From the IMG/VR virus record IMGVR_UViG_3300032236_001859, positions 62,001 through 126,000 of that record: 64,000 nt of DNA. The stretch is one strand, 5' to 3'. Numbering within the stretch: position 1 is the first letter of the stretch; each line of letters opens with the position of its first letter. The notes beneath the pieces were generated by a model, which worked only from the letters and a program-made list of their open reading frames with translations, was not told where the DNA came from and did not search any database. Below, piece by piece: positions 6,699-56,787 of the stretch. Position numbers and translations under genes: made by a program.

Positions 6699-6753
6699 GA
6701 TTATTCTCCTTCTGAGTGTGGTGACTTCCTTTTGCCAGACAATGAGTCATAGC

Positions 6754-6827
6754 AAAAAAAGAAGTCACGCCCACTCAACTATGACCACCCCTTTCGGGGG
6801 TAGCCATAGTTGAGTGGGCGTGACTTC
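6754..6827 (-). terminator. Very long hairpin terminator
   Basis: Perfect 23-bp arms (6761-6783 and 6805-6827), inner stem with GAAA loop on minus, then T7. Confidence 0.8.
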
Positions 6828-6909
6828 AGATAGAAAGCCAAGTCTTGCGACTTAGAAATCTTTTATGGATTATCTTTAACGTCCCTCCAAGGGGGACAAG
6901 ACGACGACA

Positions 6910-7264: not shown

Positions 7265-7690
7265 TCAGAGGTGGCTCACCCAGGGGGCGATGTCCTCCTC
7301 CTCCTTGAATACGGGGAGGGCGCCGGTGCCCACCCATTTCAGGTGGATGAAGGTGGGCTTCCCACCTTCCGGGGAACGCATGGCATTCCATGCTTCCATC
7401 ATTTCCAGGCCTCGGTGACAATAGTCACCGGCACTGACCGCGGTGGTGGACCGCCTGTCAGCTATTGAGCGGAGTGCCGGGGGGAACACCCCGAACACAT
7501 AATCCGCTTTCAGCTCTCGTGCCGCCGCGGAGAGCAGGGCCAAGGTGGCCCTCACGTCTTCCTTGTTTTCGAGAGCCTTTTCAGCCCCCAGCCCCATGGG
7601 CTGGCACAGCTTGAGGCCCATGGCTTCAATCTGTGCCAGCTGATCCTGCGTTGGATTGTGACGTGAAAACCAGATAGCGTTGCTGTTCAT
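7265..7690 (-). CDS. Csx20/Csx15-like (CARF-related) protein, candidate ring nuclease
   Basis: WFSRHNPTQDQ, ADYVFG and EGGKPTFIHLKW; SD AAAGGGA. The gene itself is solid; the family call is tentative. Confidence 0.55.
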   Translation of the reverse strand: MNSNAIWFSRHNPTQDQLAQIEAMGLKLCQPMGLGAEKALENKEDVRATLALLSAAARELKADYVFGVFPPALRSIADRRSTTAVSAGDYCHRGLEMMEAWNAMRSPEGGKPTFIHLKWVGTGALPVFKEEEDIAPWVSHL

Positions 7691-7798
7691 ATAATCCCTT
7701 TCAGGTGAGGCCGATTCAGTCGGCGACGTCCTCTGCGTTTATAGGGGCTTGGAACCCTCGATCTGACATCAGACAGATCGGCCGCATTACGTCATACC

Positions 7799-7843
7799 AA
7801 AAAAAAACCGTGGGAGTCGCTGGCGTACCAGCGACTCCCACGG
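7799..7843 (-). terminator. Intrinsic terminator
   Basis: Perfect 16-bp stem with UACG loop on minus, followed by T9. Confidence 0.85.
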
Positions 7844-8592
7844 CTGAAAATTCATCAGGGTTGTTTCGGAGGCGCCATTCTCCCCCTCACCTGACTGGCT
7901 TTTTTGCATGGGAGCCGACCCACGTGTTGGTACCTCCTCTGGTCTTCGAGGGGGCCGTCATTTCCGTGACGTACACCAACAACCCTACCAACTGGGTTGT
8001 CAGCGTTGAGGGGGATCTGGACCCTCACCAGGCTACAGGCGCCGGCGCTATGCCGCGATTCCGACGAACCCGCTGTAGCGCGGTTTTCGCCGACTGACGG
8101 ATACGGGTGTACCGCTGCCGTCAGGACAGCCCAGATATTACTATCTGGGTTGACCTCCCCCGCTACGGAGAGGCGTATCATGAGTGCCCTTGTGGACATC
8201 CCGGATGGGCTCCGGTATCCCAGGAGCTTCCCGCCCTGGGCAAGTGTGTGGCTGTTATCACCACACACTATCCTTAACTAATGTTAAGGCAGTCAAACGT
8301 GGTGGTCCAGCAGTGTCCTACTGCCTGGGGGAATAGCGCCCCGTGACCACGTTTTTAGGCTTTTCCCTTTGAGGGGACCCAGCCATGACTGTTGGGGTAT
8401 CACCGCCTCTTTCCCTTTAAGGGGACCTGGCCGTGACCGTGGGAGGTCTCACCCTTTCCCTGCTGGGCATCACCCAAGCAGGTGGGACAACCCACATGTA
8501 AGACAACCCTCGCACAATAAAGTGCAAGGGTTGTCTTGGTGGGTGATGGAGATGTCGGTCTGGGGTGAGCCAGAACTACTTAGGTCCATCAC
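7844..8592 (-). ncRNA. Candidate large structured non-coding RNA (~750 nt)
   Basis: Near-continuous hairpins between an AT-rich promoter-like site (~8593-8612) and the 7799-7843 terminator; only weak ORFs are present. Confidence 0.4.
8362..8460. repeat. Degenerate tandem repeat, 45-48-bp unit (two copies plus a start)
   Basis: TTTCCCTTT(G/A)AGGGGACC..GCC(A/G)TGAC at 8362 and 8410; TTTCCC again at 8455. Confidence 0.7.
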
Positions 8593-8622
8593 TATAATAT
8601 ACGACAAAACGGGGTTTTATTT
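8590..8622 (-). promoter_or_regulatory. Putative promoter for the leftward early region
   Basis: AT-rich minus-strand sequence AAATAAAACCCCGTTTTGTCGTATATTATAGT containing -10-like hexamers. Confidence 0.45.
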
Positions 8623-8625
8623 AGC

Positions 8626-8833
8626 TAACCCCCCGGCAGGGGTTGGTTTACGCTTACAAGCCTTATTTTGGGTCCCATAAGGATCCCGACGTTAATCTAC
8701 CTGGATTAACGATACCCGTGATACCCCGGGATCCACCCGGGGGGGATCCCCCATCCTTATGGGATAAGATTTTTTGTCCCATAAGGAGTGTTCACCTGGA
8801 TAGGTTAATACCCCCCCCCTCGGCAGGGGTATT
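8626..8833. repeat. Cluster of direct and inverted repeats (origin- or operator-like)
   Basis: TCCCATAAGGA at 8673 (+), 8754 (-) and 8777 (+); CCCC..CGGCAGGGGT hairpins at both ends; three GGATCC. Confidence 0.6.
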
Positions 8834-11309
8834 AAGTGGTTTCAATGAATATCGAGGAATAGATATTCAGGGTGCGTTCCTCGATACCCCATTCCGTGGG
8901 GGTATTCTTGACCAGGAGGTTGGCCCTGACCAATAGGCGCTCAATAAACGCCATTTCCAGCCTGGGTAGCCCAGGGGTCATAAACAGCCTGGAAACCTCG
9001 GTGCGGTTAAATATGACGACGCCTTCTTTGGTTTCGACGTGGAGCCCGCCGGCTTCAACCCCGCTCCAGAGGTGGGCGAGGACAAGACCACCTGAGTTAT
9101 CTGGGGTCGCGAATACCCTGCCGAGATCGGAACCCGCTTGGAGCACCGCGGTGGGGTCCACTTTCCGGGCACGCAAGGCATTGGCGAGATCCCCGGCGAC
9201 CCTGCTGTAGAACCCAACTGGGTTGGTGTCAAACCCTGACTTCGATTTCGTGAGGAGATCGGGGAGGAGTAGGAATATCGTGTTCAGGTTCTCGACGCAG
9301 GGGACATCATAGATATCCAGGCATGCCCATCCCGGGTGTAACCGGAGCAGCTTGTGCTGGAGGCGATCCGCGGAGACCAAGATGTTCTTGGGACCATGGG
9401 GCTTCAAGGCGGCTTCCATGACTTCCTGGGAACTCCAGGTCACCGGCATCACCAGGGGGTTCTCGGCGTGTCTGGCCAGGGCGCCGGCGTCGGGATCGGT
9501 GACCACTGGGATCCCGAGGATCCCGGCAACCTTCTCGACGACGTGCTGGGCACTGTGGACCACGATCCCGGTGCCCCCGAGACCCTCACGGGTCCGCATC
9601 AGGTTACCGGTGAGGACAACTGCCATCGTGGCGAACTCGACGTAATCCCAGGCCGCCCATTGCCGGGATCCCAAGTTGACTGGGGCCTGGATCTGGGGTC
9701 CGCTGAGCCGGGATTCCGTCATGACTACCCCAGAGGGCAGCACGGAGAAGTGGGGCATACAGAGCACCCCGGAATCCCGCTGCCACCCATAGGTCGCCGC
9801 CAATGTGGATCTCGTCGGGGCATTGAATGCAGCTGCGATTCTGAGGAGCTCACGTGCCCATGCCGGCTTCATAAATGGGATATCGTTGCCACTCCTGAGC
9901 AGGATGAAGTCCTCGATCCATTTCGCCGGGTTCTTCCGGAGGGCATCGTAGTCGGCGTCGAGATTCCAGGTCTTCCCTTTGAAGGTCAGGGTGCCCGAGG
10001 CCACGTGGGTTTTCTTCACGGGATCCGTGGTGATCTCCTTGATAACCAGGATCACTGATGAGATCAGGGAGTTGCCGTGATACCAGCCATCGCTGCGTTC
10101 CGTGATAATCTTGCCGTCGATGTCCACGGAACGCGGGGCATCATCGGTAACAAAGAGTGCTTTGAGATCCCGGAGATCAGCGCCCTCAAAGTAGGTCAGG
10201 ATCTGGTTGCGGTGCGCCAGGGGTATCGAGTATGCAGCCACCATCTTCTGGGCCATCTTGATGTCCTGGGCGAGGAGGAGTCTCCCCATGGCCTCATGTG
10301 GCGGCAGCGATGCCCGGATCATGGAGTTCACAATACCTGAGGAGGTCAGCCCGGAGCGACCAAAGCCTTCGTAGAAATCGAAGATGATATGGGCATCCCT
10401 GGCATCCGGGGAATACCATAGACACCCTGCACCTAGAACCCCGAGTGCACCATGGAAGACCTCGGCGCGTTCGGCGAGGAGGCTGGGTACAAAGACGGGC
10501 TGGGTACCCGTGAGGTGGAACAGCGAGGGGGTCTCCGTGGCGACCACGAATGGGGCCTTGATACCACCATCGGCCCACTGCCGCATATTGAACCGAAAGG
10601 CCACCGAGGGATCCCTGACCACGAATGAGGTGTCATGATCATCGCCGACGAGGTTGGCGTACCCCATGGCCTTACCGGGATGGAGACTGAGGTAGGTCCA
10701 TGTCGCCAGGGTTTTGTCGGCGAGATTCGCCCTCTTGGGGAGGATCAGCCAGAACCCCACGATCTTCCACTCCGAGTATGCCGGAATCGCGATAGCCGCG
10801 TACTTCCCCCAGGTCTGCATCGCCGATTTCGCTGACTTCGGGATCTCGATGTCGTGATCCTCCAGCATCTGGGAAATCAGGGCGATGTGGTAGTTGGATC
10901 CCGCGCGACCCGCGGGTTCGCTGAACCAGCACCCGTAATCCTCGCAGATCTGTCGGATATTTCCTGGGAAATCTGAGTAGTAACTGCGGCCTGCCTTGAG
11001 GAGCCTACGAAGCCTGGCCTGTTCATCGGCGACGAAGAGGTAGTCGGCGACCTCCTGCCGGGTATCCGGGGTTACGGCTTCCACGATCTCCAGGGATGAG
11101 ATGGCGTCCGCGATGGATAGCTTGCGGACCCCGGCGAAGTAATGGATGGCGTCGCCGACGAACCCACAGTGGCTGCAGGCCAGATAGTGGGGGCCCCGGG
11201 TGGCGAGGCCGAGGTCGGTTTGACACATCAGACATCTCACCGAAGATGCAGCCATACCGACACCATGGGTGCCGAGCTGATCCAGGGTAGCCGTCAAGGA
11301 GATTCGCAT
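8832..11309 (-). CDS. Zn-finger primase/helicase-like replication protein (825 aa)
   Basis: CLMC...HYLACSHCGFVGDAIHYF...LSIADAI matches the CHC2/DnaG zinc finger; central YGWQ region resembles DUF927-type primase-helicases; start uncertain. Confidence 0.6.
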   Translation of the reverse strand: MRISLTATLDQLGTHGVGMAASSVRCLMCQTDLGLATRGPHYLACSHCGFVGDAIHYFAGVRKLSIADAISSLEIVEAVTPDTRQEVADYLFVADEQARLRRLLKAGRSYYSDFPGNIRQICEDYGCWFSEPAGRAGSNYHIALISQMLEDHDIEIPKSAKSAMQTWGKYAAIAIPAYSEWKIVGFWLILPKRANLADKTLATWTYLSLHPGKAMGYANLVGDDHDTSFVVRDPSVAFRFNMRQWADGGIKAPFVVATETPSLFHLTGTQPVFVPSLLAERAEVFHGALGVLGAGCLWYSPDARDAHIIFDFYEGFGRSGLTSSGIVNSMIRASLPPHEAMGRLLLAQDIKMAQKMVAAYSIPLAHRNQILTYFEGADLRDLKALFVTDDAPRSVDIDGKIITERSDGWYHGNSLISSVILVIKEITTDPVKKTHVASGTLTFKGKTWNLDADYDALRKNPAKWIEDFILLRSGNDIPFMKPAWARELLRIAAAFNAPTRSTLAATYGWQRDSGVLCMPHFSVLPSGVVMTESRLSGPQIQAPVNLGSRQWAAWDYVEFATMAVVLTGNLMRTREGLGGTGIVVHSAQHVVEKVAGILGIPVVTDPDAGALARHAENPLVMPVTWSSQEVMEAALKPHGPKNILVSADRLQHKLLRLHPGWACLDIYDVPCVENLNTIFLLLPDLLTKSKSGFDTNPVGFYSRVAGDLANALRARKVDPTAVLQAGSDLGRVFATPDNSGGLVLAHLWSGVEAGGLHVETKEGVVIFNRTEVSRLFMTPGLPRLEMAFIERLLVRANLLVKNTPTEWGIEERTLNIYSSIFIETT

Positions 11310-43882: not shown

Positions 43883-46800
43883 TCAGGATCCCGATATGCA
43901 GCCTGAATGCCAGTAACCAACGGCGTCTTCATACCTTCGGCCCCATTGATCCCATGGGGGTCCGTACTTACGCCACTGCATGATATCTGGAATCGTAAAT
44001 GTACCGATATCGACTGTTTGTCCGGCACTGATGACCGCCGACGGTGTCCCGACTATAGACGCTATTGCGTAAACATTGTATTGCTCGCCATAGTCGAGAG
44101 AAATTAAAGCGGATGCGTTTATTGGTGGACCTCTATCCTCTGGCCTAAAACATGATGCAATTGTGGTCATCCACCCCGCTGAAACATTGCATTTCGCCTG
44201 AACCTGATGACAGACCTGGACACCACCCTGTGTTAAGTTCCTTATGTAGTTACCTGAGCTTGGGGTACCCCCATCTGCGATTAACCACTGCCAGGCCCCA
44301 CATAGTGCTGGATAACTCCCGGCCTCGGAATCGCAGAAATGATTAGTGATTAGATGATGCCCGGATCCATCCACCCCATTTTCTATTCCCAGGGTGATCA
44401 TGGATACCACTGACGGATTCGGGATAACGCTGAATACATCTGAATAAGTCCCGTAAGTCGACCATTGTATGGGCGGTGCCGTGATTATGAAGCCTTGTGA
44501 GCGACCCCATGCACCTTCTAACCCACCCTCCCCGCTAGAAGACATCGAAGACGCGTAGTCCATTAAGGGGAACGATAGCACTACTGGGGTGTCACCTACA
44601 TCGGCGGTACCCGAGGATTCGTTACACAGGTATGGATTTTGAACCCCAAAGAAACTAAGTGTCCAGTTTGCTTTACGCAGTCTTCCCTTGTAATTACATC
44701 CTCTCAAGGCGATTTGAACACGTGCAGGACCATAGTTTTGTAGGTACTCTCTTCTGCCACCTGAACCGTTGTTGGGTCCCATATACGTATTGTCGAGTGC
44801 TGTAAATGTAAAACCAACATTATTCCTGTCCCGACGAATAGTGTCCATGAAGTATGACGGGGGTTCTGGGACCTCGAGGCGATCACACGTGAACATGGGA
44901 TGTCCGGGGTTTATATCGCACTTAATCACTTCATTGAGAGGGACATACTTTTTCACAAGTGTCAGCCGACTAATATACCCCTGACAATTACAATCCTGCT
45001 TGGTGTCGTCATAGTTGACCTGCTGCACGCTTCTGAGGCAGTTTACGACTTGGCCTTGAGTGAGTAAGTCGGCACACCCAGTACCGGAGCCCGCAGCCCC
45101 TGGGCATCTGTACAACTCGGGTCCACAACACGACACATCGATATGACCGGCGGATACCCCAAAAGTACCCCACCTGCCTGAGTAATAATTTCCATCTCCT
45201 TCATTATAGTAACCATAGAAATACCCAATGAACATCTTGGAGTCTTCCTCAACCTTCTCCCACGTGGAGTCATCGTCATCGGAGAGATACCAGGTATCGC
45301 TCTGAAACACATAAACGTGTTGACTACAGTAATCAAACTCACAGTCACAGGTAAGGGGCTCCTCGGAACCCCCTGCGCAGGGCGCACCGCGGACAAACAG
45401 TCTGGCAATGCTCGAGGATCCATTTGACCAGAGTTCAACTTCTTCGGGGTTGTATTCATACCCCCCAACACAAATCGAGGATGCCACGACTTCAGCGGCA
45501 TCTGTGCAATCTGTCTCAATGATGCCATCTACGGTAACACTGGTCGGAGTGATATCCACTGCGGAGTGTGTATGACTCTCACAATCCGCACAGGTATCCG
45601 CTGGTGGCGCGCATGTTGCCCCAGTGGGGCCTCGTGGGCCAGTATCACCTGCTCGGGAGTCAGCGCCAGGCGTACCCTGTTGACCGTCTATCCCCTTGGG
45701 GCCTTCGGCGCCTGGATATACATTTCCAGGGGCACCACGGGGACCAATGGGTCCCCTGTTACCATAACTTCCAGGTGGGCCCTGTGGACCCGGATCACCA
45801 TCGGGGCCCTGTAGACCCGTGGGCCCCATGGGGCCATTGATATTTCCACCAGCGGGGCCCACGGGACCCGCGGGACCACGCGGTCCCACTGGACCCGGAA
45901 CACCCTTGTCCCCGGTTTCTCCGATTTCACCGTCGGGGCCCTGGACTCCAGTGGGTCCAAGCAGTCCAAGGGGTCCGGCGTCGCCTTGAGGACCAATACC
46001 ACCGGCTACACCTGCGGGCCCTTTTTCACCTTGTGGACCCGGGATTCCCTGGACGCCTCGGGGTCCCTTGGGACCATCGAGTCCAGGGGCTCCTGGCTTC
46101 CCGGCTAAACCGGGGTCTCCTTTGATTCCACGTACCCCAGGTAAACCTTCGGGCCCCGTGGCACCCTGGGGTCCGATAACCCCTGTAATTCCCTGTGGTC
46201 CCGTTGCGGCTACACCAGTGGGGCCCTGTTCACCCTGGGGGCCCTGGACGCCTTGTTGCTGGGGTCCTTGGGGACCCTGGGGTCCCGTGGTACCTTGAAT
46301 ACCAGTGATGCCATGTGGTCCCGTGAACCCCCGGGGCCCCGTGGCCCCCGCGGCTCCTGGAGTCGTCCCCGGGATGCCCTGGGGACCCTGTGGACCCTGG
46401 GGTGCCCAGGCCTGAGATGACCACGTGGAAAGTGCAGTGCGTGTATAAACAACGGCGACATCAACGGCAAGATAGGTGTACCCCGTGGGTACACTGCCCG
46501 CAGATGGTCGCCCAGAAAGATTACCAACTCCGTTCAGAGCCTTGGTTCCATCGACACCACGGGGTCCCATGACCCCAGTGGCCCCCGCTGGGCTGATACC
46601 AGTGGGACCCTGGATGCCACGTGGCCCCGGTACTCCGACTGGCCCCTGCAGACCCGTGTAACCCAGAGGACCGCTTGCACCCAGTACACCCTGGACCCCA
46701 GGGGCTCCCTGGAGTCCTTGAGGTCCCGCTATACCCTGCGGCCCGGTATCACCAGGGAATCCCTGTAAACCCAGGGGGCCCTGTGGACCCGCGAGGCCTG

Positions 46801-47479
46801 GTCCAGTGATGCCCTGTGGACCCCTTGGGCCACTCAGGCCTTGTGGACCCGTGGCCCCAACGCCGATCTCAGTCCAATCCGCAATAGTATTGGTTCTCGT
46901 GTTTGCCGTGCATAACCACAACGAGAAGTTTCCGGCGTCCTCAATCCAGCGGTCACCCTGAGAATACTCTCTGGCGAGAACCCAACTCCGTGGGCATCTC
47001 CATTCCTTGAATGGGGCAGACAGCGACAGCGGACTCGGGTATATCTTTGCTGCGATTACCCATGAGTGCACGAACCAAATGAAGAGCTCATTGAGGTCGG
47101 TGTCATACCATCTAAAACCGGTGTCAGATCTACTCAAAGAAATCGCGAGTCGTTGTGTTGTCGGCCCAAACTGGACCTGGAGCTCGGAGATATGCCCAGC
47201 GGTGACCACGAGCCCCACGAGTTCCTGGGCAGCGTGGAGAACCGCTGTGGTGCCCTGGAGACCACGTGCTAACCCATGCAGGAATCTTCCAGATATCGAA
47301 GAGTATCCGATGACTTCACTGGGTTCCCCTACGAAACCAGTACCAACGGCGACGACGCCCCCATTGGGGTCGAGTCGCGTGGTATCCATGACTTCAACGT
47401 AGGAATCGGGACCCTCGGCATCAGCGAGAAGCACGGTGGCCAGTCGAGTAATCGTGTTGTTTTGAATTGGCAGAGCCAT
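43883..47479 (-). CDS. Collagen-like fibre with Cys-rich tip (1198 aa)
   Basis: Shared LPIQNN base domain, long GXY runs, HTH sequence motif (His-Thr-His), Cys/Tyr/Trp-rich C-terminus. Confidence 0.85.
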
Positions 47480-48514
47480 TCAGTACCCCAATAGAGTCTT
47501 GGTGTCACCGCAGGTCTCAACTAGAGTAGGCCCAGCAGACCTGCCGGCAACTATGAGCGACCCCGCACGCAAAATAGTAGTATCGAGGACTTGAGTGAGT
47601 GTTGTCACCGCTTTGACATGAACGGGTGATAATGTATCGCCGGCGTGGTCGTGATTACATGGGGGCTGCGCCGGCCACGTCGAGGGATCACAGGGCCCCG
47701 TAGGTCCAGTGGGGCCCTGGGGTCCCGGGATGACTCTGCCAGGGTTCCCTGGGGATCCCATGTCTCCAGTGGGCCCCTGGGGGCCTACTGGACCGATGCC
47801 GCCATCATAACCTTGAGGCCCCTGGATGCCACGACCACCCGGAGGTCCCTGGGTTCCAGCTGGACCCAGGGGTCCCTTGTTGCCCTGTGGGCCCTGAGGG
47901 CCTTGTGGCCCCGTAGAAGTTTTCCCTGTGGGCCCACGTGGTCCCTGGATTCCGCGTGGACCAGTGGGACCAACTCCAGTGGTACCTCTTGGACCCCGTG
48001 CACCCTTGGCTCCCCTGGGACCACGATCACCTTGATGCCCGCGTGGGCCCTGCTCACCCTGAGGACCCGGGATTCCGTTTGGACCCGGGTCGCCCTGGGG
48101 ACCCCATGGGCCCTGAACTCCCTGGGGTCCAATGTCGCCAGGAGGCCCCTGTAAACCGTCGCGTCCACGGTTGCCGTCTTTTCCTGGATCCCCGACATCG
48201 CCTTGGGGTCCCTGGACACCCTGTCGAAGCGGACCAGTGGGCCCCTGCGGACCCTGGATACCGCGTGGTCCCGTGACCCCATTAAATCCAGGTATCCCGG
48301 TTATACCTTGAATACCAGTGATCCCCTGGGGGCCCGTAGACCCCGTGATCCCCTGAGGGCCCCGTGGACCCTGGATACCCTGGGGACCCCCTGGACCAGA
48401 TAGACCCCGGGGCCCCTGACCGCCGACGACACCACGTGGTCCCGCGGGGCCTTGTGGCCCCTGAGGACCCGCGACGCCTTTACCAGGAAGAGGGCCTAAC
48501 CAGAGATCAGCCAT
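47480..48514 (-). CDS. Short collagen-like fibre (344 aa)
   Basis: About 260 aa of GXY repeats, then CNHDH and a short beta domain. Confidence 0.85.
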
Positions 48515-48547
48515 GATGACACCACCTTGATTTCACTATCACAGAGT

Positions 48548-51500
48548 TCATGCAATGAGATCCCATTCGATCACTGTGGACTCCCAATTCGTATTATCCC
48601 CTGTACCACGTGCAGTGTTATCCGATTTCAAACACAGGTAGTGATCTGTCCCCGCCGCGATCTTTGCAGCCGGAGCAAGTGCCGCGATGGAAGCCCCAGT
48701 GGATACTAGGGACCCATCTGCTTTACGCCCAAACGTCACGAGTCTGCCGCATGCGATCTCAACAATCCCTGTCCAGGCCCCGACGTTGCATTGCCCCTGT
48801 GCATTGGATCCCGTGGCCACAACGGTGCCATCAGATTTAAGGCCTACAGAGTGCTGATACCCCGCTGCGATAGCGGTAACTCCGGTCCAGCCCGAGACGT
48901 TACACTGCCCCGATGAGTTCAACCCAGTGGCGACGACAGTGTTATTTGATTTAAGGCCCAGTGTAAAGAAACCAGTATAACTCGCTGCGATCGATATGAG
49001 TGTTGTCCAGGACCCAATGTTGAGCTGCCCATTACCATTGGACCCCACACCAATAGCGGTGCCGTCTGCTTTACGACCCACTGAGAAATTGGGCCCACTG
49101 GATACCTGAGCAATGGTGGTCCAGCTACTGACATTACATTGCCCCGATGTATTCAACCCCGTGGCAACGACACCTCCCGTGGACAGTCTTCCCAGGGTGG
49201 TCTGCTCGCCACACGCGATCTGGGTGACACCTGTCCAGGCCCCTACATTACATTGACCGACATCATTATTGCCCTTGGCTACAACAGTGCCGTCTGAACG
49301 TAGAGCCACTGTGTTCCTGTAACCACCATCGATATCAATCAGGCTATGCCACCCCGCATTGAACTCGAGCTCGCCATAATAGCTGTACCCACCAAAGGCG
49401 TAGACAAGTGTCCCATCTGATTTGACACCGACGACGTCATAGAGGCCTACTGAAATCGCGACGATACCCGTCCACCCCGAGACGTTTAGCATTCCTCTGC
49501 CATTGTCCCCAACGGCGACAACGGTGCCGTCACCTTTCAAACCAACAGTGCAATACCTCCCACATTTAACAGCTACCATTCCGGTCCAGGTCGAAACATC
49601 GGTTTCACCATAGAATGATGAACCCGTGGCGCGTGCTGTACCATCTGCGAGAATAGCAACTAAGTGGTGGTCCGCGAGATCGAAATCTACGACATCCACA
49701 AACGCTGAGATATCAAGCATCGCACCTGGTTGGTAGTAACTGGAGTCTGCACCAGTAGTTGCCAATAAGGTTCCATTTGATTTCAGGGCGACCACGCACA
49801 TCTGCTTGGCATGAATCTTGGTGATCCCTGAAAACGGAAAAATCGAGATCTGGCCATCAGTGTTGTTACCCACGGCGACAACGGTGCCATCTGGTTTGAG
49901 ACCAATTGTATGCGTGGGTCCACAGGCCACCGCGGAGATCCCGGTCCAGGAAGACACATTGGTTTGCCCATCTGTGTTTTGCCCAGTCGCCAAAACGGTG
50001 CCGTCTGACCTCAAGCCCACGGAGTGGTTTCGACCACAAGCCACGGATACCACATCCGCCCAAGGGATAAAAGCTCGAAGACCAATATCATTCGTGCTCA
50101 CCCCAACAACGGAGCCATCTGCTCGGCGTCCTACGAGGTGGTATGGCCCCGCATGTATCTCAACAATCCCTGTCCAAGAATTAGCGGCGTATAGGGGGTT
50201 GCCTGGATCCGATGGAGTCACCACTACGGTGCCGTCGGCACGCAATCCCGCCGCGAAGTAGTACCCGGCCGCGATGGCCGTTATCCCTGACCACGTGTAC
50301 ACTGCATTATAGACTTCAGAGTACCAGGTGTCTCCTGCGTACCAGACATATCCATCGTAAGTGAGCGCTAGAGAAAAATCTGCTCCTGCGGCTATGGCAA
50401 CAATTCCATAATTCCAATAAAAATTAAGCTGACCCGAGTAGTTATTGCCCACTCCACGTACGGTGCCGTAATAATCTAGTGCTAGGGTGTGGTAAGGCCC
50501 CATGGCGATGGCGTCAATGTTGGACCACGGGTACTGGTACCCATAGTAGTCGTCAAAAAGGTTCAATTGGCCAGAATCATTGTTACCTGCGGTGACCACG
50601 TTGCCGTAGTCACCATATATCCCTATGGTGGATTGCTCAGCACAATAAATCTTTCTGACATCCGCCCATAAAGAGACTTCGCACTGTCCATAGTTATTCA
50701 GACCCGCGGCATGCCCGACCCCGGAAACGATACCGACAACGTGCCCGTTACCGCTTGCGATTGGCCACACACCTGGGCCCCACGTCGGTATCGCAGTGAG
50801 CTGCCCATAGGCATTACTGCCCAGGGTGTGATAATTACCGAGGTCATCTGTCGCGATTACATTCTCATAACCACATGCGATATGAAACTGAGATATCGAA
50901 GTCCACCCTGCGGTGCTAGTTTGTCCATACGAGTTATCCCCTGTACTCACCACGGTTCCGTCTGTTTTAACTCCAAGACTGTGTTGGTCCCCACACGCGA
51001 TATCAGTGATGCCACTCCACCCCGAAACCGTGATCTGATTATTGACATTACTCCCCGCCCCGACGACGGTGCCATCTGATAGCAGCCCCAATGAGTGGGC
51101 ACCACCACCGCTAACCTTGGTTACCCCAGCCCAGGATGAGATATCGATCTGCCCCGATGTATTCAGCCCAGTGGCCACCACGGTATGATCTGCGAGAAGC
51201 CCTAAGGTGTGGTTATAGCCACATGCAACCTGAATAAGTGTCAGCCATGATGTCACCGCGCATTCACCATTTGTGTTGTACCCAGTACCCACCGCGGTGC
51301 CATCTGCCTTGAGACCGATGGTGAACTCAAGCCCGCATGCGAGCTGGGAGATATTTGACCACCCCGTGGTGTTCAGTTGTCCGTTGACATTTCTGCCCTT
51401 GGTGGCCACGGTACCATCATCTTTGACACCAACTGTGCTCTGGTTACCCGCGGCGATCTGATTCACGAGTAACCACCCCGCCAGGTTTCGTTTTCCCTGC

Positions 51501-52864
51501 CCAGAATCCCCTGCACTTACCAGGGTTCCATCGGCACGTAATCCAACTGAAAGCGCGTACCCAGCGGAAACCGCGATGATCTCAGACCACGTGGAAACAT
51601 TACATTCCCCGTAAGCATTGTAGCCCACTGCAATGGCGGTGCCATCTGTCTTCAAACCTAGGACATGGATGCCATTAGAGGATATACCTTTGATTCCTGT
51701 CCACGCCGCACAGCCGGCTTCACCATAATTGTTGTTACCTGCATATAGAACACCGCCGCTGGGGGTCACCGCTGCGGTGTTCTGTTGATTACCGTTCGCT
51801 GAAATCTTGGCGTCATAACTGACGGTTGCTGATGACCGGAACCAGACCTGATCAACGGCGATATCCCACCACATGAACCCAACTGGCTGTGAATCATAAT
51901 TGGAACGAGGGCCATCCAATGAGGTCGCACTGGCCGTGGTGCCCCCACGTGGCCCCACTGGTCCTTGCGCCCCCTGGGGGCCCGTGTGCCCTGCGATTCC
52001 AGGGATACCTTGTTGCCCCGGTGTTGTTCCCGTGGGACCCCGGGTGCCCCGAGGGCCCTGACCACCACGTGGACCCATCGGACCCAGTGGTCCCGTGATT
52101 CCCAGTGGTCCCGTGATTCCCTGGGCACCCATGGCTCCCTGGTCCCCACGAATCCCACGTGGACCCACTGCGCCCTGTGGACCCTGGAGTCCAGTTAGCG
52201 GGGCGACACCCTGGATACCACGTGGGCCTGGTTCGCCGGTTGGGCCAGGGGCACCTGTGGCACCTGAGACGGGTACCCAGTCTGCCAGAGTACGCGTTCT
52301 CGGAGAAACCACGCATCGCAGGAGTTCATTGGTATCCGTGTTTACCCAGCGGTCACCACCATTGTAATCAGCGTTAGTCAGTATCTCGGTGACACCACCG
52401 ATGAACTCCTGAACAGCGACCCCAGTTCCTGCAACACGGTCCAATAAGGGGACTACCCAATCGGAACCAGTCCACTCATAGAACTCGTTGTCATAGGTAT
52501 CGAACCAGGTCTTCCCGACATCCTGTGCAGTCAGGGTTTCCCCAAGAAGCAGTCTTGCAATGGTGTCACCCTCACCGACTTGAAGCTCCGTGATGTGCGC
52601 TGCTAAAACGCTGAGACCACAGTAAGCTCCGACTGGGTGCAAGATAATAGGGGTGCCCATGATTCCACGCGCAGATAACATCAGTGCGTGGTCCGTTTTA
52701 GAACTGTAACGTGCGATCTCGGTGATACCCGGGTTCGATGTCGCGATGACGACGACTCCCTGAGATGGGAACTCCGTGGTATCTGCGAGATGCGCGATGG
52801 TATCCCCGGTGTCGAGCACAGAGGTCAACTTGGTGAGCGCATTGTTGGATACAGGTAGCGGCAT
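48548..52864 (-). CDS. Collagen-stalk fibre with RCC1/BLIP-II beta-propeller repeats (1438 aa)
   Basis: About 28 repeats of W-x-x-I-x-x-I-A-x-G-x-x-H-x-x-G-L-K-x-D-G-T-V-V-A-x-G-x-N-x-x-G-Q. Confidence 0.9.
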   Translation of the reverse strand: MPLPVSNNALTKLTSVLDTGDTIAHLADTTEFPSQGVVVIATSNPGITEIARYSSKTDHALMLSARGIMGTPIILHPVGAYCGLSVLAAHITELQVGEGDTIARLLLGETLTAQDVGKTWFDTYDNEFYEWTGSDWVVPLLDRVAGTGVAVQEFIGGVTEILTNADYNGGDRWVNTDTNELLRCVVSPRTRTLADWVPVSGATGAPGPTGEPGPRGIQGVAPLTGLQGPQGAVGPRGIRGDQGAMGAQGITGPLGITGPLGPMGPRGGQGPRGTRGPTGTTPGQQGIPGIAGHTGPQGAQGPVGPRGGTTASATSLDGPRSNYDSQPVGFMWWDIAVDQVWFRSSATVSYDAKISANGNQQNTAAVTPSGGVLYAGNNNYGEAGCAAWTGIKGISSNGIHVLGLKTDGTAIAVGYNAYGECNVSTWSEIIAVSAGYALSVGLRADGTLVSAGDSGQGKRNLAGWLLVNQIAAGNQSTVGVKDDGTVATKGRNVNGQLNTTGWSNISQLACGLEFTIGLKADGTAVGTGYNTNGECAVTSWLTLIQVACGYNHTLGLLADHTVVATGLNTSGQIDISSWAGVTKVSGGGAHSLGLLSDGTVVGAGSNVNNQITVSGWSGITDIACGDQHSLGVKTDGTVVSTGDNSYGQTSTAGWTSISQFHIACGYENVIATDDLGNYHTLGSNAYGQLTAIPTWGPGVWPIASGNGHVVGIVSGVGHAAGLNNYGQCEVSLWADVRKIYCAEQSTIGIYGDYGNVVTAGNNDSGQLNLFDDYYGYQYPWSNIDAIAMGPYHTLALDYYGTVRGVGNNYSGQLNFYWNYGIVAIAAGADFSLALTYDGYVWYAGDTWYSEVYNAVYTWSGITAIAAGYYFAAGLRADGTVVVTPSDPGNPLYAANSWTGIVEIHAGPYHLVGRRADGSVVGVSTNDIGLRAFIPWADVVSVACGRNHSVGLRSDGTVLATGQNTDGQTNVSSWTGISAVACGPTHTIGLKPDGTVVAVGNNTDGQISIFPFSGITKIHAKQMCVVALKSNGTLLATTGADSSYYQPGAMLDISAFVDVVDFDLADHHLVAILADGTARATGSSFYGETDVSTWTGMVAVKCGRYCTVGLKGDGTVVAVGDNGRGMLNVSGWTGIVAISVGLYDVVGVKSDGTLVYAFGGYSYYGELEFNAGWHSLIDIDGGYRNTVALRSDGTVVAKGNNDVGQCNVGAWTGVTQIACGEQTTLGRLSTGGVVATGLNTSGQCNVSSWTTIAQVSSGPNFSVGRKADGTAIGVGSNGNGQLNIGSWTTLISIAASYTGFFTLGLKSNNTVVATGLNSSGQCNVSGWTGVTAIAAGYQHSVGLKSDGTVVATGSNAQGQCNVGAWTGIVEIACGRLVTFGRKADGSLVSTGASIAALAPAAKIAAGTDHYLCLKSDNTARGTGDNTNWESTVIEWDLIA

Positions 52865-52884
52865 GTTCTATCCAGAGGTGTGAG

Positions 52885-55800
52885 TTAATTCTCGGTGACG
52901 TCTGAACCAAGTAGGGGGTTACCGGGGAGTCCAGCCCCTGGGGTCTTGGTATAAAACTTGCAGTCAGGTAAATGTCTTTCGAGAACCCAAGTAGTTACCT
53001 TACCGCTGATCACAATCACCAATGTAGCAAGGCAGTCGTTGGTGGCATCAAATGTTAGACTAGCGCGAAGAACCTTCCCACCACCTGCTAATCCCTCACA
53101 AGTGAGATCAAAAGATCCTGCTTCCAGTGTCCACTTCCTGGGATCTGCGGTCTGTATCAACCTCAGATTGAGTCCACAGTCCCCTATAGAAGGGATGTTT
53201 GTGATCGTGAATCCAAAGTTGATTTCCGTACCCGGCATATCGCACCCACACTGCTCATACGGCGTACTGGACCCACTGGAGTGATGCGATGAACCACTGG
53301 AATGATGTGATGATCCGCTGGAGTGATGTGAACCACTGGAGTGATGCGACGACCCACTGGGGAGGTGCGAACCGCTGGAGTGATGGGAACTCGCATGACT
53401 CGACCCATGCCCAGACGACTTGCCAGACGGTGGTGGTTTCCCACTGGATCCCATGTGACTCGACGTGTGGCCAGACTTGTGCCCAGACGATCTGCCAGAT
53501 GGCTGATGTTGCCCACTGGAGGTATGGCTGTGCGGCTGACTATGTGGATGGCTGTAGGGGTGGCTACCACAGCATCGGAGGTAGTCGAACCCTGGAGGTG
53601 GATTTGTGTTGGGGTCCGGTGGCATCCCGGCCGCAGGTGACACCTCGCGCATCGTGAAGAGGTCACAGTCAAACTGAGTGCAGGGATCCACTACCACTGA
53701 CTTGATGTAAACGAAACGACATGGATCCGGGTCGAGAACTGGATAGAAGACTATATCGTTGACATGAACACCTTCCCCGCCGCTGTGGTCGCAGACCACG
53801 CAGGTACCAACACAACGTATTCTACCACCGGTGTCGTTGAACACCGCTGTCCCCACAACCTGGATTTCAGCACCGGGGTACCACCCATCGGGGACATCCC
53901 TAAATGGACCGGCCCATACCACTCTATCCGTGAGATCCCATGCCATGGTGTCACAGTTGAACGTGAACTCGCTGATTACGAGCTCCTTCATGAGCTCGCA
54001 GTTGCATTCACATGGATGGCTGTAGGGGTGACTGTATGGGTGACTGTGCTTCCCGCTGGAGTGGTGTGACGACCCCGAGTGCTTGGCGGAGTGATGTGAT
54101 GACCCCGAGTGTCTCCCACTGGAATGATGCGATGACCCCGAGTGATGTGCGGACCCCGAATGATGCGAAGACCCTGAGTGCTTGGCAGAGTGATGCGATG
54201 AACCCGAATGATGTGATGAGCCCGAGTGTTTCCCACTGGAATGATGCGATGAACCCGAGTGGTGTGACGAACCCGAGTGGTGTGACGAACCCGAATGATG
54301 TGACGAACCCGAATGATGTGACGAACCCGAATGATGCGATGATCCCGAATGATGCGATGATCCCGAATGATGCGATGATCCCGAATGATGTGACGAGCCC
54401 GAATGATGCGATGACCCCGAATGATGCGATGACCCCGAATGATGCGATGACCCCGAGTGGTGTGACGACCCCGAATGGTGTGACGACCCCGAATGGTGGG
54501 ATGACCCACTGGAACCACTGGAACCACTGGAACCACTGGAACCACTGGAACCACTGGAACCACTGGAACCACTGGAACCACTGCTGCCGCTGGACCCACT
54601 GGACCCACTGCTACCATTGGACCCACTGGACCCACTGCTACCATTGGACCCACTGCTACCACTGGACCCACTGGAACCACCACCACTGCTGGCTCCACTT
54701 TGTGTGGGGCACTCGGTGACTTCACAATCACATGCTGGTCTGGGATCGCATTGTTTAAGAACCCCGATGCACTTGAACCCAGTAGCAACGCAGGCCTTGA
54801 TGACATCCGGGCACCAACCCACCCCACCAACATCGAGCGCATTCGTCGAACACAGCACTGTATCCATCGTGGAGGTGCAATAGTTTTGTGCAATGATTCC
54901 TGCCGGAGAAATCACGTCACCGCCATCTTTGGGATCCCCTCTACCGAGAACCCCATCACAAACACAGTTACTTACACAGTGTTGATGAGGTTGGCATGCC
55001 GGTTTACCCTGGGAATCACCGAAATCGCCCTGGGGGCCGCGCGGACCCGTGGGACCATCTGGCCCAACGGGGACTTCAGCATCGGGTCCTGCGGGGCCCT
55101 GCGGACCCCTTTCACCTTGAGGACCATCTAACCCGGGGACTCCATCGTATCCCCGTGGTCCCGCTGGACCCTGTACGGTTCCCGCGGGGCCCTGCGGACC
55201 CTGGGGCCCGATATCTCCGGCTTCTCCCTTTAGCCCAGGGATGCCTTGCGGACCCGTGCTACCATCTGGGGGGCCGTCGTAATCACTGCCACGTGGACCA
55301 ATGGGTCCCGTGTGACCACGTGGTCCAGTAACAGATATTCCAGTTAAACCTTTATCACCGGGTTCACCCTGATCACCAGTGGCACCCTGGGGTCCCACTG
55401 GACCCGGGTCGCCTCGAGGCCCCTTGATCACGGCTCCCATGGGTCCGCGGTCACCCCGGGGCCCCTGTGGACCCGGGAGTCCCTGTGGACCCTGTGGCCC
55501 CTGGATGCCGGGGTTGCCTGGTAGCCCGTCTACACCAGGGGCGCCTTGTTGACCCTTGATGCCCTGGGGACCCTGTGGCCCTGGAGTAGTCTGCGCTGGC
55601 CCCTTGGGCCCCATGTAGCCCTGGGGTCCAGTGGGGCCGATCCCAGTGCTCCCCTGTGGACCCGTCGGACCCTGGGGGCCTGGATCTCCTGGGGGACCCA
55701 CTGGCCCCTCGACTCCGGTGTTTCCAGCGATGCCCTGAGTGCCTTGAGGCCCCACGGCACCATCGACACCACGTGGTCCCGTGTACCCCCGTGGACCCTG

Positions 55801-56787
55801 GGCACCCTGGATCCCTTGGATTCCACGGTCGCCTTGACGTGCGGTGAATCCTGATCCCGTGGCACCCTGGGGACCAGTGATACCTTGGGTACCCCGGGTT
55901 CCCGTGGCACCACGTACACCTGGGATGCCTTGCGGTCCCGTTAAACCCTGGGATCCATCGGGGCCCTGATAGCCCTGTGGACCACTGGGTCCACGCGGAC
56001 CACTGGGACCCAATGCAGTTGGTGTGGCGCCAATTGGACCCTGGACACCAGTGGGTCCAATGTCACCCGTTGGTCCACGGGGTCCTCTGGGACCCGTGGC
56101 CCCTGGGGTCCCCGGACCCTGGTCTCCTCGTGGACCCGTGGGGCCCAGAGGACCCCGTGGACCCGTGGCCCCCACAAGAATAGGCGACCAATCGGAGAGC
56201 TGGCCGGAAGGTGTGTGATCGCAGATGTATAACAAGTTGGTGTCGGTATCTAACCAGCGATCACCAAATGAATATGGAAGGACTACGATGTCCTCTGCAG
56301 GCGCAATGAAATCCTTGATACCGCGACTTGGTCCGGTGAGGCCGCCCCCATGGGTGAGTACGGCCGCATTGAACTTGAAGCCATCCCATCGCGTGAAGAC
56401 ATCGCCAGGAGTATCCAAGTAGATGTAACCACGCTCACGTAAACTCAGGGTCAGCGCGGCGCGCTGCTCTGGGGTCATCTCGTGAATCCGGAGTTCCTGG
56501 ATGTGCTCTGCGGTGATCGTGGACCATATCTTGGTACCAGTATCCCATGCCTTGGGAGTTGTACCCCCGAACCCACGACCATTAAGGGGGAGCAGTTCAA
56601 CGAAGAGGAGTCCCGCGCCAACATTCTTGTTTGATAGCCGGATGAGCTCAACACCAGTGGATCGAGACCCCAGAGCAACAATGATCGGGGTCTCGATCTT
56701 GGAGGCATCGCTGACTTCAATCACTGTACCCGAGACCCCAAGTGGGGCCGTAAGGGTAACAACGGCATTGTTCTGAATCGGTAGCAC
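52885..56787 (-). CDS. Collagen-like fibre with GSS and SGSSHH repeats and Cys-rich domains (1300 aa)
   Basis: Base domain, GXY runs, then (GSS)n and (SGSSHH)n. Confidence 0.85.
54012..54690 (-). repeat. Coding tandem repeats: 18-bp (SGSSHH) and 9-bp (GSS)
   Basis: Units such as GAATGATGCGATGACCCC and CCACTGGAA, read directly. Confidence 0.9.

What the first reader, a model, noticed from the sequence alone, without database searches (positions are those of the whole stretch)
7844..8592. Candidate ~750-nt structured RNA with its own promoter and terminator
Seen: at least a dozen consecutive stems, for example CAGCCCAGAT/ATCTGGGTTG, AGTGTGTGG/CCACACACT, CCTTAAC/GTTAAGG, CTGACGG/CCGTCAG, AAGACAACCCT/AGGGTTGTCTT, and multi-branch GTTGGT...ACCAAC and AAACGTGGT...ACCACGTTT. 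They are bounded by an AT-rich promoter-like site and a perfect terminator. The ORFs here lack the strong SDs of neighbouring early genes. At the 5' end, segment 8541-8550 can pair with either 8585-8592 or 8468-8476, which are mutually exclusive. I did not recognise tRNA, tmRNA, RNase P or intron motifs. Inference: an undescribed large phage ncRNA, first in the early region and directly upstream of the ring-nuclease-like gene.
Basis: partly seen in the sequence, partly recalled or inferred. Interest (0 to 1): 0.68.

Follow-up and report, generated by a model that had tools for sequence, protein, structure and literature searches.

The report
New large structured phage RNA cassette
A 216-kb soil and freshwater phage carries an optional stretch of about 650 bases (about 800 as a full transcript) that encodes no protein but keeps some twenty RNA hairpins through matching double mutations, so it is probably a previously undescribed large non-coding RNA, though no RNA data exist yet to show it is made.

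Summary
Window 7691-8831 is a gene-free gap in a 216-kb phage genome and is one of its most structured regions (MFE z about -10 on either strand).

- The 137-aa frame 7855-8268 is broken in L011 by frameshifting indels and four stops.
- Base pairs are kept: 11 compensatory events against 1.9 expected (0 of 5000 permutations).

No Rfam family matches inside the element at E up to 10.

Anatomy on the - strand:
- promoter-like motif TATATTAWAG, invariant across relatives;
- a two-hairpin leader (8592-8500) shared by all relatives;
- an optional module of about 650 nt and about 20 hairpins (8499-7853), present in four haplotypes and absent in four;
- an intrinsic terminator (7845-7797);

In L011 a pistol ribozyme sits at the same relative place.

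Best reading: a discrete, accessory, probably trans-acting structured RNA of a new family. Transcription, strand and function are inferred, not shown. The "ring-nuclease-like" neighbour and the conserved 5' switch are not supported.

The parts
8592..8622 (-). Conserved AT-rich promoter-like element AAATAAAACCCCGTTTTGTCGTATATTATAG. Its core TATATTATAG lies at 8601-8592.
   Evidence: It is invariant in window, L004, L007, L011, L018 and L019. L008 has TATATTAAAG. TATATTAWAG occurs only three times in the 216-kb genome. It does not match the sigma-70 consensus. Promoter activity is inferred.
8543..8592 (-). Leader hairpin 1: GUGAUGGA...UCCAUCAC, with an inner hairpin CUGG/CCAG.
   Evidence: It is found in the MFE and alifold structures. 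It is present in all relatives, with or without the module. L008 keeps it through G-U pairs. L004 has one A-C mismatch.
8500..8537 (-). Leader hairpin 2: a 16-bp stem, AAGACAACCCUUGCAC / GUGCGAGGGUUGUCUU. It is the last element shared with relatives that lack the module.
   Evidence: Repeat I2. L004 and L008 show two compensatory pairs (GAC..GUC to GGA..UCC). Similarity to the module-less relatives ends at about 8500-8505.
7853..8499 (-). Optional structured module of about 647 nt with about 20 hairpins. It includes two copies of a 27-34-nt stem/internal-loop/stem motif (8443-8410 and 8395-8362) and an invariant GUAA-loop hairpin (8148-8131).
   Evidence: Homologous in L007, L011 and L018. Absent from L004, L008/L009, L019 and X7. 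Compensatory changes. No conserved reading frame. No Rfam match at E up to 10.
7797..7845 (-). Intrinsic terminator: an 18-bp stem with a UACG loop, followed by a U run.
   Evidence: Found. One compensatory pair, 7810 G>A with 7841 C>T, occurs in the soil and wetland variants.
7725..7793 (-). Type-P1 twister self-cleaving ribozyme in the 5' UTR of the 141-aa gene. Cleavage is predicted between U7789 and A7788. The site is placed from memory of the family, not tested.
   Evidence: Rfam RF03160: 63.5 bits (gathering score 67.2), E 1e-13, model positions 1-68 of 68. The same element is in L007 9432-9500. It is 97.6% identical in L019.
7265..7690 (-). 141-aa accessory gene downstream. It is a variable cassette, not a conserved partner of the RNA.
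   Evidence: It is replaced by other genes in L007, X2, X4, L018 and L019. Only one distant homologue was found. The Atlas gives a lead to the viral MJ1673 family, PF27247.

Best explanation
Window 8592-7797 (- strand) is read as one non-coding transcription unit of about 800 nt.

Anatomy and proposed working:
- A phage-lineage promoter motif (TATATTAWAG) drives a 93-nt two-hairpin leader that all relatives share.
- In about half of the known haplotypes the leader is followed by a 647-nt module of about 20 hairpins. This module is a new family of large structured RNA.
- The transcript is ended by a strong intrinsic terminator. Read-through RNA is severed from the downstream mRNA by a self-cleaving ribozyme: twister-P1 here, pistol in L011.
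- The module is an optional cassette. It keeps its sequence and pairs while the genes after it change.
- It therefore most likely acts on its own as a folded RNA in trans, as a scaffold or decoy for a host or phage factor, rather than as the 5' UTR of a particular gene.
- Candidate binding sites are the two repeated stem/internal-loop motifs and the many invariant loops.

Shown: the region is non-coding, base pairs are conserved with compensatory change, the module is present in some relatives and absent in others, and the terminator and ribozyme motifs are there.

Inferred: transcription, the - strand, discrete 5' and 3' ends, and action in trans. The biological role (accessory host-takeover or anti-defence RNA) is a guess, at about 0.3.
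For: Structure:
- MFE z is -10. The region is one of the most structured in the 216-kb genome.

Non-coding:
- Gene callers leave the region empty in L006, L007 and L011.
- The 137-aa frame is destroyed in L011, and substitutions are even over codon positions.
- A library-wide protein search with that frame finds only spurious ORFs laid over the same DNA.

Pairing is selected:
- With window-derived pairs and three sequences there are 9 compensatory and 13 one-sided changes against 21 broken. Slid controls give 0-1, 2-6 and 40-47.
- With four sequences there are 11 compensatory events against 1.9 +/- 1.3 (0 of 5000), and 31 broken pairs against 48.5.
- Hairpins 8289-8272 and 8269-8243 have 96.8% of cells paired and 5 pairs changed on both sides. 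Only 1 of 500 shuffles reaches this.
- Paired columns change less than unpaired ones (9.2% against 14.8%, window against L011).

Sequence constraint:
- The module diverges 11.3% between window and L011. Fourfold sites of the neighbouring 798-aa gene diverge 33.7%.
- Between window and L007 the figures are 2.1% and 8.7%.

Discrete unit on the - strand:
- The conserved motif upstream, the terminator, the twister or pistol and all neighbouring genes point the same way.

Independent of the downstream gene:
- Four different 3' contexts were found.

Accessory:
- The module is absent from L004, L008/L009, L019 and X7.
- It is absent from the whole 171-kb record of L019, which is 79% complete.
Against: - No RNA-seq run holds this phage, so there is no direct evidence of a transcript, its ends or its strand.
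- Covariation and folding energy do not tell the strands apart. MFE and G-U counts are similar on both.
- Only four distinct sequences, falling into two clades of one phage lineage, are known. R-scape-grade statistics are therefore out of reach.
- Long-range helices differ between predictions, so only the local hairpins are secure.
- The lower divergence of the module could partly reflect recent recombination in this mosaic region rather than purifying selection.
- The promoter does not match sigma-70.
- Nothing links the RNA to a partner protein or target.
Confidence: 0.68

Rival explanations
1. The module is a very long cis-acting 5' leader, that is an attenuator, a riboswitch-like sensor or an RNA-stability element. 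It would control read-through of the terminator at 7845-7797 into the ribozyme-processed accessory genes, and would not be an RNA with a job of its own.
For: - It lies between a promoter-like motif and genes on the same strand.
- A strong terminator directly follows it in window, L007 and L018. That is the layout of conditional terminators.
- An 11-nt perfect complement exists between 8097-8087 and the start of the 141-aa gene's UTR (7726-7716). Only 5 of 1334 background windows pair as well.
- A 10-mer identical to the terminator's 3' arm lies at 8445-8436.
Against: - The module keeps its sequence in front of four different downstream arrangements, including one without that terminator (L011, pistol).
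- The putative antiterminator 10-mer does not co-vary with the terminator. In L007 both terminator arms change together and the 10-mer does not. L011 and L018 rewrite it.
- The second UTR complement is not significant, and a 3-nt insertion breaks it in L007.
- At 650 nt it is far larger than known leaders, and no riboswitch family matches.
Confidence: 0.15
2. The stems work at the DNA level, for example as hairpins in single-stranded DNA at a replication origin, a packaging or recombination site, or an N4-type hairpin promoter. No functional RNA would be involved.
For: - Folding energy and covariation are equally good on both strands, as expected for DNA hairpins.
- The region is a recombination and assembly-break hot spot.
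- Palindromes and repeated TCCCATAAGGA sites lie just upstream.
Against: - The module is dispensable: half of the close relatives lack it. An origin or packaging site would not be.
- It is framed by signals that work only in RNA, all on one strand: an intrinsic terminator, then twister or pistol.
- Several conserved helices contain G-U pairs on the - strand, which would be A-C mismatches on the other strand.
Confidence: 0.07
3. The region is not one RNA fold. It would be a string of independent small elements, such as separate protein-binding hairpins, small RNAs or terminators, that happen to be adjacent. It could include CRISPR-repeat-like or antitoxin-like decoy units.
For: - Only local hairpins are robust. 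The long-range closing helices differ between predictions.
- Two units of about 30 nt, 48 nt apart, are 82% alike and end in GGGAAA(G).
Against: - All hairpins are inherited together, in the same order, and are gained or lost as one block with sharp ends at 8499 and 7853.
- There are no internal U-run terminators or promoter motifs.
- The repeated unit occurs nowhere else in the genome or in IMG/VR.
Confidence: 0.08
4. The region encodes a protein, either the 137-aa ORF 7855-8268 on the - strand or one of the overlapping + strand ORFs.
For: - An open frame of 137 codons exists.
- A gene caller called a 114-aa version in one wetland contig, and 97-aa and 195-aa versions elsewhere.
Against: - L011 has six frameshifting indels and four stops in that frame. 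Substitutions by codon position are 16/19/13.
- The other ORFs fail in the same way.
- The called 'proteins' differ in frame and extent between contigs.
- There are no family, PDB or wider homologues.
Confidence: 0.02

Closest known systems
ROOL, GOLLD and OLE: large 'ornate' bacterial and phage non-coding RNAs (PMC5737381; PMC12286853)
   Same: - Length is 550-800 nt, with many stems.
- The RNA is non-coding and carried by phages or prophages.
- It is a stand-alone gene of unknown function.
- It is accessory rather than universal.
   Different: - No covariance-model match was found at E up to 10.
- There are no neighbouring tRNA genes.
- It is known from a single phage lineage.
- Multistem junctions, pseudoknots and oligomerisation, which define those RNAs, are not established here. 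The secure part is a row of local hairpins.
Ribozyme-associated phage gene neighbourhoods, with twister, pistol, hammerhead and hatchet (Weinberg et al. 2015, as cited in PMC4604425 and PMC6765202)
   Same: The locus carries twister-P1 in the window. Relatives carry pistol and sub-threshold twister-P5 matches between small phage genes. This is the kind of setting in which new RNA classes were found before.
   Different: The 647-nt module itself matches none of the ribozyme models. A terminator follows it, which argues against self-cleavage as its own function.
Structured RNA motifs followed by terminators: drum, DUF3800-I, skipping-rope, FuFi-1 (PMC5737381)
   Same: A conserved structured RNA ends in an intrinsic terminator, is not a typical 5' UTR, and lies in mobile or phage-like contexts.
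   Different: Those motifs are much shorter, and some of them associate with a particular protein domain. This module is about 650 nt and has no conserved protein neighbour. No Rfam family matched in this region.
Phage RNA decoys: CRISPR-repeat mimics (Racr) and pseudo-ToxI antitoxin repeats. This comparison rests on my own knowledge and was not tested.
   Same: These are accessory, non-coding, repeat-containing RNAs in variable phage regions. This module holds two units of about 30 nt with a small hairpin.
   Different: There are only two copies, 82% alike, embedded in a much larger conserved fold. The host, its CRISPR repeats and any toxin are unknown.

Membership tests
Known large structured RNAs in Rfam 15 (GOLLD, ROOL, OLE, HEARO, raiA, group I and group II introns, RNase P, tmRNA, 6S) | A match to the family's covariance model | tested here: not met
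   There is no hit at gathering score in the whole window. No hit at E up to 10 lies inside 7853-8499 on either strand. No hit lies inside the L007, L011 or L018 copies at E up to 0.01. ARAGORN finds nothing.
Self-splicing intron (group I or II) | It interrupts a gene whose exons join into one frame, and it has a conserved catalytic core | tested here: not met
   The module lies in an intergenic slot. Relatives without it go from leader hairpin 2 straight into intergenic sequence or other genes, not into a restored ORF. No intron model matches.
Conserved structured non-coding RNA (generic) | Base pairs are kept through compensatory substitutions more often than chance gives | tested here: met
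   There are 11 compensatory events against 1.9 +/- 1.3 (0 of 5000 permutations). Slid controls give 0-1. Two hairpins reach a score matched by only 1 of 500 shuffles. Only four sequences are available.
Conserved structured non-coding RNA (generic) | No conserved reading frame | tested here: met
   Frameshifts, stops and an even codon-position spectrum are seen in L011.
Conserved structured non-coding RNA (generic) | It is transcribed as a discrete RNA | not testable with these tools
   No RNA run holds the sequence. The ends are inferred from the conserved motif, the terminator and the ribozymes.
Twister ribozyme, type P1 (RF03160), for 7793-7725 | A covariance-model score at or above the curated gathering score | tested here: not met
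   The score is 63.5 bits against 67.2. The match is nevertheless full-length (1-68 of 68) with E 1e-13, and most of the consensus's capital-letter positions are present (UAA, GC.GCC, CCAAGCCC, UAAA, GAGG). The two departures (C>U in GGUCCC, G>A in GAGGG) may pair with each other in a pseudoknot. That point is from memory and untested.
Twister ribozyme, type P1 (RF03160), for 7793-7725 | Site-specific self-cleavage | not testable with these tools
   This needs in vitro transcription of 7800-7715 and a cleavage assay.
Pistol ribozyme (RF02679), for L011 10178-10239 | A covariance-model score at or above the curated gathering score | tested here: met
   The score is 36.5 bits against 34.5, over model positions 1-68 of 68.
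Intrinsic (Rho-independent) terminator, for 7845-7797 | A G+C-rich stem-loop directly followed by a U run | tested here: met
   It has 18 pairs, 12 of them G-C, a loop of 4, and a U run on the - strand. A compensatory pair is seen in variants.
Sigma-70 promoter, for 8592-8625 | -35 and -10 hexamers with a 16-18-nt spacer | tested here: not met
   The scan gives no site there. TTAGCT lies 21 nt from TATATT. The element is instead defined by conservation and by its recurrence.
CRISPR array or solitary-repeat RNA anti-CRISPR | Repeats that match a host CRISPR repeat, in array-like spacing | not testable with these tools
   There are two units 48 nt apart and 82% alike. The unit is absent from the rest of the genome and from IMG/VR. 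The host is unknown.
Ring nuclease (Crn or AcrIII-1), for the 141-aa neighbour | Sequence or fold similarity to a known ring nuclease | tested here: inconclusive
   There are no PHROG, NCBIfam, PADLOC or PDB sequence hits. The Atlas gives a lead to the viral MJ1673 family, PF27247 (score 0.86-0.88, TM 0.61). The AlphaFold model has pLDDT 50, too poor for a fold search.

The most novel reading that the evidence does not exclude
The module is the founding member of a new class of large, complex-folded phage RNA on the scale of ROOL and GOLLD. It would be made in quantity from the first position of a hypervariable, ribozyme-rich accessory region of a jumbo phage. It would act by itself, either as an RNA decoy or scaffold against a host factor or defence system, or as an RNA with its own catalytic or assembly activity.
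Probability: 0.3. Interest if true: 0.8.

Novelty: new member of a known kind. Interest (0 to 1): 0.62.

Why it matters
Very few bacterial or phage non-coding RNAs longer than 500 nt are known, and none of the phage-borne ones (GOLLD, ROOL) has a known function.

This one has three useful properties:
- It is an optional cassette with natural isogenic-like relatives that lack it.
- It sits behind a conserved promoter motif.
- It is framed by a terminator and interchangeable self-cleaving ribozymes (twister here, pistol in a relative).

That gives clean boundaries for cloning. It also gives a built-in comparison for asking what a large phage RNA does. The locus further shows self-cleaving ribozymes acting as cassette-boundary elements in a jumbo phage's variable region, which bears on the open question of what such ribozymes do in bacteria and their phages.

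Tried and rejected
Searches for more copies:
- A distant blastn of 7700-8850 against GenBank phages found nothing.
- Exact-motif scans of IMG/VR with two module motifs found nothing.
- The metagenome scan returned only an unrelated AT-rich phage terminator sharing 22 nt (L017).
- The genome scan returned only a chance 21-nt match in Streptomyces (L021).
- Relatives cannot be drawn for a virus record.
- A terminase-based search found only the two IMG/VR relatives already known, then hits at 27% identity.

Coding:
- The 137-aa frame gave only spurious ORFs laid over the same DNA, plus low-complexity hits.

Strand:
- MFE, alifold energy and G-U counts do not discriminate the strands.

Ideas rejected:
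- An antiterminator at 8445-8436 against the terminator arm shows no three-way covariation.
- The module-to-UTR complementarity has one arm that is suggestive (5 of 1334 windows as good) and one that is not significant.
- CsrB-like GGA-loop sponge: by eye, only one loop carries GGA, so I dropped the idea.
- The hairpins are not a repeated MITE or REP family. Their motifs are unique in the genome.

The 141-aa neighbour:
- The single-sequence AlphaFold model was too poor (pLDDT 50) to search by fold.

Full report
**Setting.** The window is bases 62001-126000 of a 216,043-bp IMG/VR phage record with terminal repeats. A long - strand operon of tail-fibre and baseplate genes ends with an 825-aa gene of unknown function at 8832. 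The next called gene on that strand is a 141-aa ORF that starts at 7690. The 1141 bases between them hold the finding. Downstream on the - strand, small genes run to about 3600, next to a + strand large terminase gene.

- Window 7800-8600 folds at -391.8 kcal/mol on the - strand, against -299 +/- 9 for dinucleotide shuffles (z -10.0). The + strand gives z -9.6.
- In a GC-corrected scan of the whole genome in 200-nt windows, 7701-8901 supplies six of the 17 most stable windows.
- The single most stable window, 6701-6900, is a separate 31-bp perfect terminator hairpin.
- The terminator at 7845-7806 plus its U run is found by the scan.
- No sigma-70-type promoter is found at 8590-8625.
- Rfam at gathering thresholds and ARAGORN find nothing in the window.

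**Relatives.** No GenBank phage matches. I reached relatives through the neighbouring 825/798-aa protein, its 90% clusters and their contigs. I also used contigs laid on the window, a spurious ORF called over the region and the leader motif.
- Four distinct haplotypes carry the region: the window (L006 is identical), L007 (soil; the same variant occurs in wetland run X4 and soil run X6), L011 and L018.
- Four haplotypes carry the same upstream motif and the first two hairpins but not the rest: L004, L008/L009, L019 and freshwater run X7. Their similarity stops at about 8500-8505.
- A search of the whole 171-kb record of L019 (79% complete) finds no copy elsewhere.

The unit therefore splits into two parts. 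The first is a universal leader: the motif plus hairpins 8592-8543 and 8537-8500. The second is an optional 647-nt module, 8499-7853. The slot after hairpin 2 is a cassette site. L019 has a 109-aa ORF there, and L008 goes straight to the first small gene. Many assemblies break within 0-350 nt after the 825-aa gene. That fits a hot spot of population diversity.

- Between the window and L011 the module differs at 11.3% of aligned bases.
- The 137-aa frame 7855-8268 acquires six 1-2-nt indels and four in-frame stops. Substitutions fall 16/19/13 on the three codon positions. The + strand ORFs fail in the same way.
- The neighbouring 798-aa gene shows 98/49/261, as a coding sequence should.
- Gene callers mostly leave the region empty. 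Where they call something, its frame and extent differ between contigs.

Base pairs are kept.
- Using pairs from the window's own MFE fold, and so not fitted to the relatives, three sequences give 9 compensatory and 13 one-sided pair-preserving changes against 21 broken. Partners slid by 1-3 columns give 0-1, 2-6 and 40-47.
- With four sequences I shuffled 3' partners among pairs of the same type. Compensatory events are 11 against 1.9 +/- 1.3 (0 of 5000). Broken pairs are 31 against 48.5 +/- 2.3 (0 of 5000).
- RNAalifold on four sequences lists 14 compensatory events in eight local helices and one long-range helix.
- For hairpins 8289-8272 and 8269-8243, the count of structure pairs gives 96.8% of cells paired, five pairs changed on both sides and a covariation score of 0.406 against 0.156. 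Only 1 of 500 shuffles reaches this.
- Leader hairpin 2 shows two compensatory pairs in L004 and L008. The terminator shows one in the soil and wetland variants.
- Paired columns change less than unpaired ones. The module diverges three to four times less than fourfold-degenerate sites of the adjacent gene: 11.3% against 33.7%, and 2.1% against 8.7%. Recombination in this mosaic region could contribute to that last figure.

**What frames it.** A permissive Rfam search finds a full-length type-P1 twister ribozyme at 7793-7725 on the - strand. It scores 63.5 bits against a gathering score of 67.2, with E 1e-13. It lies five bases after the terminator's U run and 35 bases before the 141-aa gene.
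- L007 has the same element. L019 has it at 97.6% identity in front of a different gene.
- In L011 the module is followed, after a 48-nt hairpin segment, by a pistol ribozyme above its gathering score (36.5 against 34.5). A MYG1-exonuclease-like gene comes next.
- In L018 the module is followed by a hairpin and a U run, then a 193-aa gene.
- Sub-threshold twister-P5 matches lie between small genes further downstream in L004, L009, L011 and L018.
- Self-cleaving ribozymes are known to cluster with each other and with phage genes, and their role there is unresolved (PMC4604425, PMC6765202).

So the module always ends at a signal that terminates or cuts RNA, on the same strand as the genes. The gene behind it changes.

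**Promoter.** The 31-nt element ending in TATATTATAG (8622-8592) is invariant in six relatives. L008 has TATATTAAAG. TATATTAWAG occurs only three times in 216 kb. The other two copies form a divergent pair at genome positions 61274 and 61456, both as TATATTAAAG. This fits a phage-specific promoter, but activity is inferred.

**Strand.** Energies, covariation and G-U counts are nearly symmetric between the strands. I assign the - strand from context: motif, terminator, ribozymes and genes. Some C-to-U changes opposite G in the two best hairpins preserve pairing only on that strand.

**What it is not.**
- No Rfam family, including GOLLD, ROOL, OLE, HEARO, raiA and the introns, matches inside the module in any copy.
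- Its motifs are unique in the genome.
- A possible antiterminator (the 10-mer at 8445-8436, identical to the terminator's 3' arm) does not co-vary with the terminator.
- An 11-nt complement between 8097-8087 and the downstream UTR is unusual, with only 5 of 1334 background windows as good. A second complement is not significant, and L007 breaks it.
- The 141-aa protein has no support as a ring nuclease. It has only an Atlas lead to the viral MJ1673 family.

**Most likely working.**
- A conserved promoter motif starts a transcript whose first 93 nt are a shared two-hairpin leader.
- Where the cassette is present, about 650 nt fold into about 20 hairpins. These include two copies of a stem/internal-loop/stem motif and several invariant loops, one of them a GUAA tetraloop.
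- The RNA ends at the terminator. Read-through is cut off by the ribozyme, so the module RNA and the downstream mRNA become separate molecules.
- Because the module is optional, under constraint and indifferent to what follows it, I read it as a stand-alone accessory RNA that acts in trans as a scaffold or decoy.
- I put about 0.7 on 'discrete structured non-coding RNA of a new family' and about 0.3 on the trans-acting accessory or anti-defence role.

**Rivals.** A giant cis-acting leader (0.15), a string of independent small elements (0.08), a DNA-level element (0.07) and a protein-coding gene (0.02).

**Novelty.** This is a new family within a known and very small category: large structured phage-borne non-coding RNAs such as ROOL, which averages 581 nt, and GOLLD (PMC5737381, PMC12286853). 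It is known so far from one phage lineage, in soil, wetland and other environmental metagenomes from several studies.

Noticed in passing
window 7725-7793 (- strand): A full-length type-P1 twister self-cleaving ribozyme lies between the terminator and the 141-aa gene. It scores just under Rfam's gathering score (63.5 against 67.2 bits, E 1e-13). Its two departures from the consensus might compensate each other in a pseudoknot. That point is from memory and untested.
   Followed up: partly
L011 10178-10239; L004 10026-10087; L011 13236-13298; L018 1729-1791; L009 9870-9940: Relatives carry a pistol ribozyme (above the gathering score) at the place where the window has twister-P1. They also carry sub-threshold twister-P5 matches between small genes further downstream. 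Ribozymes seem to mark cassette boundaries in this variable region.
   Followed up: partly
window 6760-6828 (- strand): A 31-bp perfect hairpin followed by a U run sits after a 37-aa ORF. It is the most stable 200-nt window of the whole 216-kb genome (z -9.5 against shuffles).
   Followed up: partly
window 8640-8831: Between the stop of the 825-aa gene and the promoter-like motif lies a cluster of inverted and direct repeats: TCCCATAAGGA three times, GGGATCC palindromes, and TTAATACCCC/GGGGTATTAA. These may be operator or terminator sites. In L004 and L011 a reverse-strand ORF (363 and 276 aa) that looks HNH-endonuclease-like by eye is inserted here. It has no family hit (L011 ORF).
   Followed up: no
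L010, L012, L013, L014, L015, L016 (contig ends): Six independent assemblies end within 0-350 nt after the 825/798-aa gene. This suggests strong population-level variation, that is cassette shuffling, right at this locus.
   Followed up: no
genome positions 61274 (-) and 61456 (+), just left of the window: The only other two TATATTAWAG sites of the genome form a divergent pair. They share flanks (TTAGATATATTAAAGGACC.TATGTGATGC) and are probably promoters of the same class.
   Followed up: no
window 7855-7878 (- strand): A seven-codon mini-ORF, AUG GCG CCU CCG AAA CAA CCC UGA (MAPPKQP), lies behind a purine-rich stretch. It ends 9 nt before the terminator stem. The only change in L011 and L018 is synonymous. 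A ribosome-dependent effect on termination is conceivable but untested.
   Followed up: no
window 8087-8097 and 7716-7726: An 11-nt perfect complement links a module hairpin with the first bases of the 141-aa gene's UTR after the twister. The duplex energy is -23.8 kcal/mol, and only 5 of 1334 genome windows do as well.
   Followed up: partly
window 7265-7690; L011 10341-11273 and 11377-11766: The 141-aa protein has one distant homologue in the protein collection. By Atlas features and structure it looks like the viral MJ1673 family (PF27247). In L011 a 129-aa relative sits behind a MYG1-exonuclease-like gene. Atlas clusters also mix MJ1673 with MYG1_exonuc.
   Followed up: partly
window 43883-56787 (- strand): Three very large adjacent genes (1198, 1438 and 1300 aa) match tail-fibre families with collagen-like repeats. 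The middle one also matches RCC1-like repeat families.
   Followed up: no
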